64,000 nucleotides of DNA from contig BQFW01000012.1 of the NCBI GenBank assembly GCA_020891255.1, positions 2,356,001 through 2,420,000 of the forward strand. Direction: 5' to 3'. Below, piece after piece: positions 23,297 to 26,997 of this stretch (position 1 is its first letter; each line of letters starts with the position of its first letter). The notes beneath the pieces are model-generated. The model did not search any database and was not told the origin of the DNA. It saw only the letters and a list, made by a program, of their open reading frames with translations. Made by a program: the position numbers and the translations under genes. This DNA comes from Entomortierella parvispora E1425 (taxonomy: Eukaryota; Fungi; Mortierellomycota).

Positions 23297-25342
23297 ATGT
23301 CTCGACGAGCAGCAGCACAGCAACCCCAATACACCTTTGACGACGACGACGAAGAAGACGATGACCAGGAGGATATGTTGAGCGGGAGCGAAAACGGCGA
23401 TGACGACGAAGATCAGGACGATGGCGAGTCAGAGGATGAAGATGCATATGGAGATCGCCCCAAGGGTCGTTCCGCCTCCTCGTCTTCCTCAGCCAAGAAC
23501 ACAGCTGCCTCTGCATCCTCCAGGAGGGGCAACAACTCGAAGCAAACTGGTGCTGGATCAAGGACAAAAGCTCCCGCACCCCCGCCAGCTCGATCCACTT
23601 CCAGCCGCGCGTCAGCAGCTGCAGCGGCAGCTGCTCTGCCACCCGCCACCAAGGCACAAACACGCGGAGGCAATGTTACAAAGCGGACACAGTTCGTAGA
23701 GCCACCCTCGAGCAGGACACGGAAAGCGGCTGTCAACTATGCAGAGCCTGAAGAGGATGATCTTGAGGACGAGGACGAAGAGGATGAAGAGGATGAAGAG
23801 GATGATTTGGACGATGACGAAGAGGATCAGGTCCCACCCGCCAAATCAACCTCGTCTTCCTCCAGGCGAGGCGCTGCAGCCCCTGCACCAGCACAACGAT
23901 CCTCAACTAGGAGAACCGCTGCGACGACACAGGCCAAGCAAACCTCAAAGAGGCGAGGTATTTTTTTTTTTTTTTTTTTTTTATTTTTTTAAAAAAGCCT
24001 CTATTACCAGGTAAATTATGAAAAACTCCTAACAGCCCGTTCGTGGTCTTGTTTTTTTAGCGTCCACACCACTTAGTTCAGAAGACAACGAAGATGACGA
24101 GGACGAGGATGACGAGGAAGAAGAGGAAGAGATCTCGCAACCAGTATCACCCACGAAAAAGCGTGGAGGACGGCCTTCCAAGGACGTTGACATGGACTCT
24201 GTCACATCTTCACAACGTGGTAGTAGCCGTACCGGCGACGATGATCTAGATATGGAGATGATGGAGGATGATGACGAGGATAATCGGAGCCTCGGCGAAG
24301 AAGAGGATGAAGAGGATGAGGACGAAGAGGACGAGGAAGAGGAGGACATTGATGTGGAGGATGATATTGACATGAAGGACGATGACGATGATGAGGATGA
24401 CATCGAGAACACAAAGCCGTTGGTACCGAAACCTGGCCTGCCGTCCTCTGCAAACGCCAAGGGCAAGAAGGTCGACCGGAGTCTGATGGATATGGAAGGA
24501 GATGACGATGATGACGATGATGACGAGGAAGAGTTCAGTGACGACGATTTCTCAAATCCACAGATGGGCATGGGTTTCGGTGGACTGATGACAAAGCGAC
24601 AGAGGTCAAAGTTGGATGTTCATGATGTCTCCTTGGAGCTCTTTGAGTTACCTGTTGGTATGTCTTGCGACTACATTTGGAATGGAATGGCCTTCACCTC
24701 TCACTTGTTCCCTAACACAATCAACTTTTGGTTTTTGATTTAATAGCCGCCTCTCGCAAACGCCACCACACGGAGGAAGAAATGGCACTGAAAAAGAGTG
24801 AAATCACTCGTCGACGCAAGAATCAGTCAGCACAAAGGGCGGAGCAGGACAAACTCGAGACCATCAACCGATTGCTCAAGAAGCAGGCTGGAAAGCGCAA
24901 GAAGGGTGCTCAGGACGATGACGAAGGAGGCGATGACAAAAAATCGAACGAAGTAGATGGCGCCAACGATCGATCAGGACGAGTGAACAGATTCATGACG
25001 CCTTCGAGCTATGTTCGTATCAGGTACGACGCTGACGGAACGACCCTCTCCATACCCGAGGAGTCGTTGGAGGATATTCCATCTTGGATCCAGAAATCGA
25101 TCCCTCCAGTGACACCACGGGTCGACTTGTTGAAGCTTGATGCAAATGGAGTCAAGAGAGGGCCAGTTTCGATCGAGGTCCTGGACACGCCCATGGTTCC
25201 CTTGAAGGAACCCGCATATCCTGCACCAAGGGGAGCGTGCGAAGTAACGCAGTGCCATCAACCTTGGAAGTACCGAGGGACCAAGAGCAAAAAGGTTGCA
25301 TGTGGACTGGAACACTTGAAGTTGGTCGAGGCTGAGGCATAG
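23297..25342 (+). CDS. IES2: INO80 complex subunit Ies2/INO80B (PAPA-1 domain + HIT-type zinc finger); 3 exons
   Basis: Exons 23297-23957, 24061-24657 and 24747-25342. Long acidic N-terminus. PAPA-1-like TEEEMALKKSEITRRRKNQSAQRAEQDKLETINRLLKKQ. C-terminal CEVTQC...KY...ACGLEHL. Confidence 0.85.
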
Positions 25343-25498: not shown

Positions 25499-26997
25499 TC
25501 ACTCGACTTTGACAGAGAAAGGCTCCTCCTCTTGACCGTCAGATTCAGCTATCCACTCTCCTTTCTCCCCCACTGGAGAAGCCTGGTTTTGACTACATGG
25601 GCTGGAAAACAAGCTGACACGACTCACATTGCCCACATTCGACCCTAGTCCTCCAGAGCCGCCCACGATCTGGCCACTGGCAATATTGGCAGCAGCCCCA
25701 GATCCTGAGCCGACACCTGTTCCGCCACTTATACTTGTCGCAGACCGATTACTGTTGACCGAGAATGCGGCGGTGGATCGATTGTTGGAGACTTGCCCCA
25801 TGATGGCATTGATGGCTGTGCTATCCAAAGCAACATTGGCCAATCCTGCAGAGGTTGGGCTTGGATTAAAGGACATTGTCATATTGGGTGACATGGATGA
25901 AGAAGGGCTCATGGCCACGGAGGTCGATGTAGCGGCATTGTAGCTTGTAGTGGTTGCTGCTGTAGTCGTGGCGGGAGGGGGAGAGAGCGTTGCAGGGTTG
26001 TACGTTGGCACAGCGCCATTCGAGGTCTGAGTGGACTGAGCTGTCTGGGGGACGACCATGAGTCCAATAGAGAGGGAAGGGTCATCGATCCAAAACATGG
26101 CGATAAAGCAACAAATCACCAACAGGATAATCTGTGTAAAGACAAAGATCCAGGGCTTGATGCTTGGGAACAAGCATTGACTCACCGAGGCCGAGAACAA
26201 GGACAACGTCCCAAACGCCACAAACGACAAGAGCGCATGGCCCCAGATATGGGTGTCTCCAAAATCCAGGTAGTAATAGTTGCCCTCTGCATAGACGATT
26301 CCTGCTCTGTATTTCGGTTTTGCGGGCTCCTTCTTTTTCTTGTGATGGGTCGTTGTCGCTGTCGTGGATTTGGAGGTGGAGGTCTTGCGTTGGACGAGCG
26401 TGCCAGAAGAGGAGCCATTGACTCTGGTCTGGGTGCTATTATCAGTCGTTTGCTGTCCCTGACTCACTTCGCCATTGCCGGTGCTGGTGCCAGTGCTGTC
26501 GGCACTGCTATCTTCGTCGTCGCTGTCGTCGTCAGTGTCGGCCAGCGGCGGCGTGCCTCCAGGAGGCACTTGTTTCAAGAACGAGAGGAAAACCGCCAAA
26601 AAGAACCCAATGCACAATGAGATCTCCAAGGCATTGGCTTGGTCGTCGGTACAGGTCGTATACGTGAACGAGGCCCCTGGAACATAATAGCACGTATAAT
26701 TGCTCGATGGAGTCTGAACAATGGTCGTAACAGGCGTAGGGGTGGCTCCTAATGAAAAGGAATATGTTTCTCTGAGAAAAAAAAAAGGGACGAAACGAGA
26801 AACAAGCACGCTGTCAGGCTATGAACCAGATGACATCCGTTGGGCACTAAGAATCCGATCTAAAACAAAAAAGTGAACTAGAAACGGTCAAGAGGGGGGG
26901 GGGGGAGGTAGACTTACAAAGCAGTGTAGATCACATAAGACCCCAAAGGCATGTAGTTTGCCAATTTGGTGATCGAAGACACGACCTGGACATCCAT
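25499..26997 (-). CDS. DUF679/DMP-like four-TM membrane protein; at least 2 exons
   Basis: Exon 26997-26918 (MDVQVVSSITKLANYMPLGSYVIYTA, GTAAGT donor) joins exon 26771 onward in phase 2. Helices align by eye with plant DMP motifs (KLANxxPxG, C, FLSF, GHALLSFVAFGTLSLF...QCLFP, final TM then SIG). The 3' end is uncertain because of a possible extra donor at about 25627. Confidence 0.7.

What the first reader, a model, noticed from the sequence alone, without database searches (positions are those of the whole stretch)
25499..26997. Fungal DUF679/DMP-like gene, from a family usually described as plant-specific membrane remodelling and gamete-fusion factors
A hidden 80-nt first exon (26997-26918) encodes SSITKLANYMPLGSYVIYTAL, matching the DMP TM1 signature (SxAxLANLLPTGTVLAF). 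It is followed by a Cys-containing loop, TM2 ending FLSF, an expanded acidic/Thr-rich loop, TM3 GHALLSFVAFGTLSLF...QCLFP (plant: HAxxSxxVFxAVALxD...xCFYP) and TM4 followed by SIG (plant GIG). Plant DMPs act in ER and tonoplast remodelling during senescence, and DMP8/9 assist HAP2/GCS1-mediated gamete fusion. A counterpart in a zygosporic fungus points to a possibly undescribed membrane fusion or remodelling function, or to plant-fungus gene transfer. The role is speculation; the motif match was made by eye.
Basis: partly seen in the sequence, partly recalled or inferred. Interest (0 to 1): 0.75.

Follow-up and report, generated by a model that had tools for sequence, protein, structure and literature searches.

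The report
Fungal relative of plant DMP proteins
This soil fungus (Entomortierella parvispora) carries one real, two-exon gene for a four-helix membrane protein that is a distant, enlarged relative of the plant DMP (DUF679) family, which the literature calls plant-specific; what it does in fungi is untested.

Summary
On the minus strand an 80-nt exon (26997-26918), a 146-nt GT..AG intron and a long exon (26771-25499) encode 450 aa. This is letter for letter the public protein EMPS_09108 of Entomortierella parvispora. The gene is single-copy and conserved across Mortierellaceae, with the same exon-1 boundary in two other genera.

The match to Pfam DUF679 (PF05078) is real but marginal: 25.6 bits against a cut-off of 25, and only TM3-TM4 align. 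Homology over the whole four-helix core rests on bridges. The Mortierellaceae profile aligns end to end with basidiomycete proteins (hhalign 99.3%, E 5e-20) and with a compact 188-aa protein (98.5%). Both halves of those proteins hit PF05078 in the right order. The loop-1/loop-3 cysteine pair known from Arabidopsis DMP1 is conserved.

Differences from plant DMPs: a 107-aa acidic/Thr-rich loop 2, a 187-aa disordered tail ending in a conserved short motif, and no HAP2 in the genome. A DMP8/9-type role as HAP2 partner is therefore excluded. Recent plant-to-fungus transfer is unlikely. Function stays inferred: a disulfide-stabilised endomembrane tetraspan scaffold. No RNA evidence could be obtained. 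No paper found describes fungal DMPs.

The parts
26918..26997 (-). Exon 1 (80 nt; Met1 to the first two bases of codon 27). Encodes most of TM1, including L12-A-N-Y-M-P-L-G-S-Y-V-I-Y-T-A-L27.
   Evidence: identical to the N-terminus of P0001. Conserved boundary in L002 and L003. Matches positions 1-30 of the family profile on its own in the six-frame genome search (that profile includes P0001, so the test is partly circular).
26772..26917 (-). Intron, 146 nt, GTAAGT..CTCAG, phase 2, with a poly-pyrimidine tract before the acceptor.
   Evidence: Introns at the same position in two other genera are 113 and 223 nt long and only 40-56% alike.
25499..26771 (-). Exon 2 (third base of codon 27, residues 28-450, stop TGA at 25501-25499).
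   Evidence: 100% identity and coverage to P0001.
26648..26749 (-). Loop 1 (residues 35-68), predicted luminal/extracellular. It has no Lys or Arg, an invariant N51-Y-T sequon, C54, and C67 (TGT at 26653-26651).
   Evidence: C67 is Cys in 29 of the 29 aligned rows that cover the column.
26576..26647 (-). TM2 (residues 69-92), ending FLSFL, followed by near-invariant K93.
   Evidence: Hydropathy 2.3. AF2 helix 69-90 with pLDDT about 90.
26255..26575 (-). Loop 2 (residues 93-199), predicted cytosolic. An acidic/Ser/Thr-rich low-complexity insert is followed by a Lys-rich stretch and the conserved Y-Y-L-D-F-G-D lead-in to TM3.
   Evidence: pLDDT below 50 for residues 121-171. Absent from the compact relative P0055.
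26096..26320 (-). Stretch aligned to Pfam PF05078 positions 88-149 (residues 178-252).
   Evidence: 25.6 bits for the whole protein. (22-22.7 bits for exon 2 alone).
26171..26254 (-). TM3 (residues 200-227) with near-invariant H205, invariant S209 and F213, and C226 (TGC at 26176-26174) in Q-C-L-F-P.
26087..26155 (-). TM4 (residues 233-255) with near-invariant Q240.
26063..26086 (-). Post-TM4 motif D-D-P-S-L-S-I-G (residues 256-263), the counterpart of the plant G-I-G-Y ER-export motif.
   Evidence: Plant motif from PMC5383025.
25502..26062 (-). C-terminal tail (residues 264-450): Ser/Ala/Thr/Gly-rich, poorly conserved and predicted disordered. It ends in the conserved motif F-S-V-K-V-E (25519-25502).

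Best explanation
This is a single-copy, two-exon, protein-coding gene of Entomortierella parvispora (public model EMPS_09108). It encodes a 450-aa tetraspan membrane protein that is a true but distant homologue of the plant DMP / DUF679 family.

Shown here:
- The gene structure.
- Conservation across Mortierellaceae.
- Four helices.
- Family-level homology.
- Conservation of a Cys in loop 1 (C67) and a Cys at the TM3/loop 3 border (C226).
- Conserved polar residues inside the helices (H205, S209, Q240, D257).
- Absence of HAP2 from the genome.

Inferred from Arabidopsis DMP1 (PMC5383025):
- The N-terminus, loop 2 and the tail face the cytosol.
- Loops 1 and 3 face the lumen and are linked by a C67-C226 disulfide that is needed for folding.
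- The S-I-G motif after TM4 helps ER exit.
- The protein self-associates.

Most likely mechanism (inference; my odds are about 0.3-0.4 for this specific role): an oligomeric endomembrane, vacuolar or plasma-membrane scaffold that shapes membranes or escorts partner membrane proteins. The fungus-specific acidic/Ser/Thr-rich loop 2 and the long disordered tail with its conserved C-terminal motif would serve as cytosolic regulatory or sorting handles.

The confidence given below is for identity and family membership, not for the cellular role.
For: Gene model:
-.
- Single copy: only this locus matches PF05078 or the family profile in the 38.9-Mb genome.

Pfam:
- P0001 scores 25.6 bits, E 1.3e-5, against PF05078. 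No other family appears at E below 0.1.
- Orthologues score 24-34 bits.

Bridges to the plant profile:
- A profile of 17 Mortierellaceae cores, searched against 1.84 billion representatives, gave only 35 hits. Among them are Ambispora (E 9e-61) and Agaricomycetes (E 7e-17 to 8e-11).
- Those basidiomycete proteins score 28-43 bits on PF05078.
- Their N-terminal halves alone hit profile positions 2-65 (E 3e-5 to 3e-3), and their C-terminal halves hit positions 88-150.
- hhalign, Mortierellaceae vs basidiomycete profile: 99.3%, E 4.6e-20, 200 columns from TM1 to TM4.
- hhalign vs the compact 188-aa P0055: 98.5%, E 2.3e-15, TM1 to TM4. P0055 itself scores 38.6 bits on PF05078 with two stretches.

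Other support:
- ESM Atlas nearest clusters by features are all DUF679 of Streptophyta. The Atlas model's best structural match is a DUF679 cluster (TM 0.61 by the target, residues 1-267).
- AF2 with the 33-sequence alignment gives four helices; TM2-TM4 have pLDDT 87-93.
- Cys conservation: C67 29/29, C226 32/33. These correspond to DMP1 C58 and C147.
Against: - The direct Pfam match is marginal. It covers only TM3-TM4; exon 2 alone falls below the cut-off (22 bits), and residues 1-100 alone give nothing.
- The fungal profile found no land-plant DMP at E <= 0.001. That profile has low diversity (Neff 1.8).
- I could not obtain plant DMP sequences, so no direct fungal-versus-plant alignment or tree was made.
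- My own AF2 model did not retrieve DUF679 clusters in the Atlas shape search. It has no meaningful PDB match.
- TM1 is only weakly hydrophobic.
- There is no expression data.
- The functional part rests entirely on analogy with plant proteins that are half the size.
Confidence: 0.85

Rival explanations
1. The family is ancient in eukaryotes, or at least older than the plant/fungal split, and was lost many times. The fungal proteins would then be vertical descendants rather than transfers. This concerns origin and is compatible with the best explanation.
For: - Present in three deep fungal lineages: Mortierellomycotina, Glomeromycotina (Ambispora) and Agaricomycetes (Phallomycetidae and Auriculariales).
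- The lineages have diverged strongly from each other. Each has its own intron positions, and these are shared within a lineage.
- A streptophyte alga (Closterium) has a domain closer to the fungal type than to PF05078.
Against: - The distribution is very patchy. Only 35 representatives out of 1.84 billion were found, none of them from Ascomycota, Mucorales or chytrids.
- That pattern requires many losses.
- No tree was built.
Confidence: 0.45
2. The patchy distribution comes from old horizontal transfer: between a streptophyte alga or plant and a soil or root-associated fungus, and/or between fungal lineages.
For: - The taxonomic range is patchy and limited to soil and plant-associated fungi.
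- Closterium proteins match the fungal profile (E 2e-7; hhalign 97.7%).
Against: - No close plant relative was found.
- The gene is single-copy, has an intron, and is present in every Mortierellaceae genus sampled, so any transfer predates that family.
- The Closterium match covers only TM3-TM4 in hhalign.
- A recent plant-to-Entomortierella transfer is effectively excluded.
Confidence: 0.3
3. This is an unrelated four-helix membrane protein. Its hydrophobic TM3-TM4 hairpin gives a borderline, composition-driven Pfam hit, and the motif matches are chance.
For: - The score is 0.6 bits above the cut-off, and only 62 of 163 profile positions align.
- The N-terminal half gives no Pfam hit.
- Shape searches with my own model are non-specific.
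Against: - Colinear two-part PF05078 hits at up to 43 bits occur in proteins that align with this one at hhalign E 5e-20 and 2e-15 over all four helices.
- The conserved positions are specific polar or special residues (P17, G19, C67, H205, S209, C226, P229, Q240, D257), not general hydrophobicity.
- No competing Pfam family appears.
- The Atlas feature search points only to DUF679.
Confidence: 0.06
4. The open reading frame is not a working gene: a pseudogene, or a model artefact in which exon 1 does not belong to it.
For: - No RNA evidence was obtainable.
- Some public models of orthologues miss exon 1 or start inside the intron (P0002, P0007).
Against: - The frame is intact over 450 codons.
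- Core identity across genera is 52-82%, with invariant motifs in both exons.
- Synonymous changes occur within exon 1 while the intron is free to diverge.
- The donor, the phase and a stop directly after exon 1 are conserved in three genera.
- TM1 is required by the four-helix fold seen in all relatives.
Confidence: 0.03

Closest known systems
Arabidopsis DMP1 (DUF679 membrane protein 1; PMC3438137, PMC5383025)
   Same: - Four transmembrane helices in the same order.
- The TM1 motif with Pro-x-Gly.
- One Cys in loop 1 and one at the TM3/loop 3 border (DMP1 C58 and C147; here C67 and C226).
- H-A-x-x-S-x-x-x-F in TM3 and C-[LF]-[FY]-P after it.
- A small-residue x-I-G motif after TM4 (plant G-I-G-Y; here S-I-G-L).
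- Matches the same Pfam model.
   Different: - More than twice the size: 450 aa against DMP1, which I recall to be about 200 aa.
- A 107-aa acidic/Thr-rich insert in the cytosolic loop 2.
- A 187-aa disordered C-terminal tail with its own terminal motif.
- The tonoplast dileucine motif ETSLL of DMP1.1 is absent from the 11-residue N-terminus before TM1 (read from P0001).
- One intron. As far as I remember, plant DMP genes are mostly intronless; this was not checked here.
- The direct Pfam score is only marginal.
Arabidopsis DMP8/DMP9, sperm proteins that escort HAP2/GCS1 (PMC9659367)
   Same: Same Pfam family and tetraspan architecture.
   Different: No HAP2/GCS1 domain is detectable in the fungal genome, so the known partner is missing. 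Nothing here links the fungal gene to mating.
Uncharacterised DUF679-matching proteins of Agaricomycetes (Ramaria, Sphaerobolus, Hysterangium, Clathrus, Auricularia, Exidia) and of Ambispora gerdemannii
   Same: Closest homologues outside Mortierellaceae. Same four-helix core and the same conserved residues.
   Different: - The basidiomycete proteins have a TM1 closer to the plant type (L-Q-T-Y-L-P-T-G-T-W).
- They carry a conserved 130-150-aa insert in loop 2, probably folded, instead of the low-complexity loop.
- They have long N-terminal extensions and different intron positions.
- All are annotated only as hypothetical proteins.
Fungal tetraspans of mating and fusion or of the cell cortex (Fig1, SUR7/PalI, claudin/PMP22-like)
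   Same: They work alike only in the loosest sense: small four-helix membrane proteins with Cys-containing extracellular loops, some of them needed for membrane fusion in mating.
   Different: No sequence relation. No Pfam family other than PF05078 is hit at E below 0.1. This is a functional analogy from general knowledge, not tested here.

Membership tests
DUF679 / DMP (Pfam PF05078) | Whole-protein score at or above the curated gathering cut-off (25 bits) | tested here: met
   P0001 scores 25.6 bits, E 1.3e-5, which is marginal. Exon 2 alone scores 22.0 bits and 22.7 bits in the six-frame genome search, both below the cut-off. Orthologues score 18.6-34 bits. Basidiomycete homologues score 27.8-42.9 bits.
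DUF679 / DMP (Pfam PF05078) | Colinear match of both halves (TM1-TM2 and TM3-TM4) to the family profile | tested here: inconclusive
   Directly, only profile positions 88-149 align, and residues 1-100 give no hit at E <= 10. Indirectly it is met. The N-terminal halves of P0039, P0040, P0043 and P0055 hit profile positions 2-65, and these proteins align with the Mortierellaceae profile from TM1 to TM4 (hhalign 99.3% and 98.5%).
DUF679 / DMP (Pfam PF05078) | Four transmembrane helices | tested here: met
   AF2 helices at 3-34 (kinked at P17-G19), 69-90, 200-227 and 233-254. Hydropathy peaks support TM2-TM4; TM1 is weakly hydrophobic.
DUF679 / DMP (Pfam PF05078) | N-terminus, loop 2 and C-terminus cytosolic; loops 1 and 3 luminal (shown for AtDMP1, PMC5383025) | not testable with these tools
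   Consistent signs only. Loop 1 has no Lys or Arg and an invariant N-Y-T sequon. Lys/Arg clusters flank loop 2.
DUF679 / DMP (Pfam PF05078) | Conserved Cys pair, one in loop 1 and one in loop 3 (AtDMP1 C58 and C147, proposed disulfide) | tested here: met
   C67 is Cys in 29 of 29 rows that cover the column. C226 is Cys in 32 of 33 rows of alignment A3. Formation of the bond itself was not tested.
DUF679 / DMP (Pfam PF05078) | Conserved G-I-G-Y motif after TM4, needed for ER export of AtDMP1 | tested here: inconclusive
   The fungal counterpart is S-[IL]-G (S261 in 23/33 rows, G263 in 25/33). The first Gly and the Tyr are not kept.
DUF679 / DMP (Pfam PF05078) | Small protein with short loops (plant DMPs are described as small integral membrane proteins) | tested here: not met
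   450 aa, with a loop 2 of 107 aa and a tail of 187 aa. The compact relative P0055 (188 aa) shows that these are insertions into a DMP-sized core.
DMP8/9 subfamily (HAP2/GCS1 partners) | A HAP2/GCS1 fusogen present in the same organism | tested here: not met
   PF10699 gives no match at E <= 1 in the six-frame search of the 38.9-Mb genome. The search is exon by exon, so a highly fragmented gene could be missed.
DMP1-type membrane remodelling factors | Expression triggers remodelling of ER and tonoplast; self-interaction | not testable with these tools
   Known only for AtDMP1 (PMC3438137, PMC5383025).
Other four-helix membrane families (claudin/PMP22/SUR7/Fig1, MARVEL, tetraspanin, CALHM) | Significant sequence or fold match | tested here: not met
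   No such Pfam family at E <= 0.1. Best PDB fold matches have Z 6.0-6.7 (CALHM Z 6.0), within the noise range for helical bundles. Foldseek against the PDB found nothing at E <= 0.001.

The most novel reading that the evidence does not exclude
DMP-type tetraspans are not a plant invention. They would be an old eukaryotic module that makes membranes competent for fusion or remodelling. In fungi, which lack HAP2 and whose gamete/gametangial fusogen is unknown, this protein would act with the still unidentified fusion machinery (hyphal, gametangial or vacuolar), using its fungus-specific cytosolic loop and tail as regulatory handles.
Probability: 0.1. Interest if true: 0.8.

Novelty: new variant of a known kind. 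Interest (0 to 1): 0.45.

Why it matters
All the DMP papers I could read call the family plant-specific, or report no relatives in fungi (PMC11477165, PMC5383025, PMC12849587, PMC10514519). Here a real relative is shown in three fungal lineages, though it is distant and enlarged. This has three consequences.

1. It corrects the stated taxonomic range of the family.
2. It identifies the residues that survived more than a billion years of divergence: the P-x-G kink in TM1, the Cys pair, H/S in TM3, Q in TM4 and D after TM4. These are the natural targets for working out what DMPs do at the molecular level, which is still unknown even in plants, where DMP genes are used for haploid induction in crops.
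3. It offers single-copy genes, in fungi that have no HAP2, in which the HAP2-independent core activity of a DMP could be studied.

The practical weight is limited. The Pfam match is already precomputed in public databases, the proteins are merely labelled hypothetical, and nothing yet ties the fungal gene to a phenotype.

Tried and rejected
- **RNA evidence for the splice.** I did not try another route, and read laying was not used.
- **Joining the exons.** The exons were searched separately. The full-length tests used the public protein P0001, which a search returned.
- **Fetching plant DMP sequences for a direct alignment or tree.**
  - The word search with the mixed alignment A2 returned only 5 fungal or unknown proteins.
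  - The search with the compact P0055 returned only P0055 itself.
  - The exhaustive profile search reached no land-plant DMP.
  - So no plant-fungus tree could be made.
- **Structure prediction.**
  - AF2 on the shallow Mortierellaceae alignment was poor (pLDDT 47.6).
  - The deeper alignment gave pLDDT 66 and pTM 0.56.
- **Fold searches with that model.**
  - The Atlas shape search gave only unspecific bacterial helical proteins (TM by query 0.22-0.31).
  - Foldseek against the PDB gave nothing.
  - VIA-align wide gave a best Z of 6.7, generic helical bundles.
  - This says nothing against the fold, because no DMP structure has been solved and the long disordered loop lowers the scores.
- **Shared introns as a sign of vertical descent.** The Mortierellaceae intron position is not shared with Ambispora or the basidiomycetes, so this test gives no answer.
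- **Gene neighbourhood.** Neighbours differ between Entomortierella, Linnemannia and Actinomortierella, so context gives no functional hint.
- **Recent plant-to-fungus transfer, and a role as HAP2 partner.** Both were considered and rejected.
Full report
**What is in the sequence.**

On the minus strand, an ATG at 26997 follows an in-frame stop 10 codons upstream. After 80 nt the frame meets ..GCT TT|GTAAGT, with TAA in frame directly after it. A 146-nt intron ends in a pyrimidine tract and CTCAG. From 26771 the frame stays open to the TGA at 25501-25499.

Exon 2 alone (423 aa) hits Pfam PF05078/DUF679 at 22.0 bits, E 1.7e-4, below the 25-bit cut-off. Exon 1 alone (26 aa) hits nothing.

The word search with exon 2 returned a public protein, P0001. 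It is 'hypothetical protein EMPS_09108 [Entomortierella parvispora]', 450 aa, 100% identical over the whole of exon 2, and begins MDVQVVSSITKLANYMPLGSYVIYTAL|ETYSFSLG. All full-length tests below used that stored protein.

**Is exon 1 real?**

The comparative evidence is good.
- Seventeen full-length proteins from about ten Mortierellaceae genera share the N-terminus, with residues 12-27 invariant.
- In the genomic DNA of Linnemannia elongata and Actinomortierella wolfii, exon 1 is again 80 nt and ends with the same GTAAGT donor in the same phase. The stop right after the exon is also kept.
- Their introns are 113 and 223 nt long and 40-56% alike.
- Exon 1 is 69-79% alike and carries 7-9 synonymous codon changes per pair.
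- Several public models miss the exon or start inside the intron (P0002, P0007), so 'hidden' is a fair description.
- The gene is single-copy: PF05078 and the family profile match only this locus in the 38.9-Mb assembly.

**Is it a DMP/DUF679 protein?**

The direct evidence is thin. P0001 scores 25.6 bits (E 1.3e-5), 0.6 bits over the gathering score. Only residues 178-252 align, to profile positions 88-149, which is TM3-TM4. Residues 1-100 alone give no hit.

The case rests on intermediates. A profile of the Mortierellaceae cores was searched exhaustively against 1.84 billion representatives and found only 35 proteins at E <= 0.001. Beyond Mortierellaceae these are:
- Ambispora gerdemannii, a glomeromycete (E 9e-61);
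- Agaricomycetes of the Phallomycetidae (Ramaria, Sphaerobolus, Hysterangium, Clathrus) and Auriculariales (Auricularia, Exidia) at E 7e-17 to 8e-11;
- three Closterium proteins;
- some unnamed metagenomic proteins.

The basidiomycete proteins score 27.8-42.9 bits on PF05078. Cut in two, their N-terminal halves hit profile positions 2-65 (E 2.8e-5, 1.6e-4, 2.7e-3) and their C-terminal halves hit positions 88-150. That is a colinear two-part match.

Profile against profile, Mortierellaceae and basidiomycetes align at 99.3% probability, E 4.6e-20, over 200 columns from TM1 to the motif after TM4.

A compact, intronless 188-aa protein of unknown origin (P0055) scores 38.6 bits on PF05078 in two stretches. 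It aligns with the Mortierellaceae profile at 98.5%, E 2.3e-15, again from TM1 to TM4. That alignment shows the Mortierellaceae loops to be insertions into a DMP-sized core.

Leads in the same direction:
- The nearest ESM Atlas clusters by language-model features are all plant DUF679 clusters, both for residues 1-275 (0.80-0.83) and for residues 1-100 alone (0.77).
- The Atlas's own model of this protein matches a DUF679 cluster best (TM 0.61 by the target, residues 1-267), against 0.21-0.40 for the other rows.

I rate family-level homology at about 0.85-0.9.

**Anatomy.**

With a 33-sequence alignment, AlphaFold2 gives four helices: 3-34 (kinked at P17-G19), 69-90, 200-227 and 233-254. TM2-TM4 have pLDDT 87-93 and TM1 64-80. 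Residues 121-171 and 261-275 are disordered.

Conserved across all lineages:
- L12, Y15, P17 and G19 in TM1;
- C67 in loop 1 (29/29 rows);
- K93 after TM2;
- Y194 and D196 before TM3;
- H205, S209 and F213 in TM3;
- C226 and P229 at its end (32/33 each);
- Q240 in TM4;
- D257 and an S-[IL]-G motif after TM4.

For Arabidopsis DMP1, Kasaras and Kunze showed that both termini and loop 2 are cytosolic. They also found that C58 in loop 1 and C147 in loop 3 are needed for correct folding and targeting, probably as a disulfide. The conserved G-I-G-Y after TM4 is needed for ER export, and the protein self-associates (PMC5383025). C67 and C226 sit at the corresponding places.

The charge distribution fits the same orientation. 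Loop 1 has no Lys or Arg and has an invariant N-Y-T sequon. Lys clusters lie at both ends of loop 2.

**What differs.**
- The protein has 450 residues. Plant DMPs are described as small; I recall about 200 residues.
- Loop 2 holds a 107-aa acidic, Ser/Thr-rich, low-complexity insert that varies in length between genera.
- The C-terminal 187 residues are Ser/Ala/Thr/Gly-rich and barely alignable. Yet the last six or seven residues are conserved in most genera (FSVKVE, HVSVKMD, HIAVKME, HLSLKME). This looks like a short linear motif for sorting or binding.
- The genome has no detectable HAP2/GCS1 domain, as expected for fungi. The one molecular activity known for a DMP, escorting HAP2 to the sperm surface (PMC9659367), therefore cannot be what this protein does.

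**Mechanism, as far as it can be argued.**

Shown here: a conserved, single-copy gene for a four-helix membrane protein of the DUF679 family, with the family's cysteine pair and intramembrane polar residues.

Inferred by analogy with AtDMP1:
- insertion in the ER with the termini in the cytosol;
- a luminal C67-C226 disulfide;
- ER exit helped by the motif after TM4;
- self-association;
- action as a scaffold that reshapes endomembranes or escorts partner proteins to the vacuole or cell surface.

The fungus-specific loop and tail would serve as cytosolic regulatory or sorting elements. I put about 0.3-0.4 on this role. Nothing here tests it.

**Origin.**

A recent plant-to-fungus transfer is very unlikely. 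The gene is in every Mortierellaceae genus sampled, in a glomeromycete and in two orders or subclasses of Agaricomycetes. It has fungal introns that differ between lineages but are shared within them. It also has no close plant relative.

I could not decide whether the patchy range reflects ancient descent with many losses or old transfers, because no plant DMP sequences could be fetched for a tree.

The Closterium proteins are a lead worth following. Their N-terminal four-helix domain matches the fungal profile (E 2e-7; hhalign 97.7% over TM3-TM4) but matches PF05078 only at E 0.19.

**Novelty.**

The library's DMP papers state that the family is plant-specific, or that BLAST finds nothing in fungi (PMC11477165, PMC5383025, PMC12849587, PMC10514519, PMC11403964). 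No paper links DUF679 or PF05078 with Mortierella, Mucoromycota or the basidiomycete genera.

On the other hand, the Pfam match is already precomputed for these proteins in public collections. What is new is the recognition and the supporting argument, not the data. I class it as a new variant of a known kind, of moderate interest.

**What led nowhere.**

Shape searches with my own model were unspecific: Atlas TM 0.22-0.31 by query, Foldseek against the PDB found nothing, and the best VIA Z was 6.7. There is no solved DMP structure, so this is not evidence against the fold. Gene neighbourhoods are not conserved between genera.

Noticed in passing
window 25502-25519 (minus strand); C-termini of P0001-P0024: The last six or seven residues are conserved across most Mortierellaceae genera ([HF]-[VILS]-[SAT]-[VL]-K-[VMI]-[DE]-COOH), although the 187-aa low-complexity tail before them is hardly alignable. 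This may be a sorting or binding motif.
   Followed up: partly
P0039-P0045, P0061, P0062, P0070, P0071 (alignment A4); L005, L006: Basidiomycete relatives carry a conserved 130-150-aa insert in loop 2 (FVYD..G..YPPP..TDPxTxxxFP..W), probably a folded domain. They also have long N-terminal extensions. Sphaerobolus and Exidia each have two near-identical copies on the same contig. Three intron positions around TM1 are shared between Sphaerobolus and Auricularia.
   Followed up: partly
P0051-P0053 (Closterium spp.), residues 1-160 of P0051: These streptophyte-alga proteins of 686-898 aa begin with a compact four-helix domain. It matches the fungal profile (E 2e-7; hhalign 97.7%) much better than Pfam PF05078 (E 0.19). 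The rest of each protein is low-complexity and may be over-predicted.
   Followed up: partly
L004:1826-2392 (P0055; SRA-derived contig): A compact, intronless 188-aa DUF679 protein of unknown organism bridges the fungal type and the Pfam profile. Its neighbours resemble a fatty-acid hydroxylase and a patatin. It has no relatives in the word search.
   Followed up: partly
P0002, P0007, P0035 (L007), P0033: Public gene models of orthologues are often wrong at the 5' end or fused. P0002 starts inside the intron. P0035 (Ambispora) is fused to a HAD-type hydrolase across a 620-nt 'intron'. P0033 (Mortierella claussenii) joins the DMP-like N-terminus to a PF01534-bearing protein.
   Followed up: no
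window 24728-25342 (+): The convergent neighbour, whose ORF ends 157 nt from the stop of the DMP-like gene, carries a PAPA-1 (INO80B-like) domain (73 bits).
   Followed up: no
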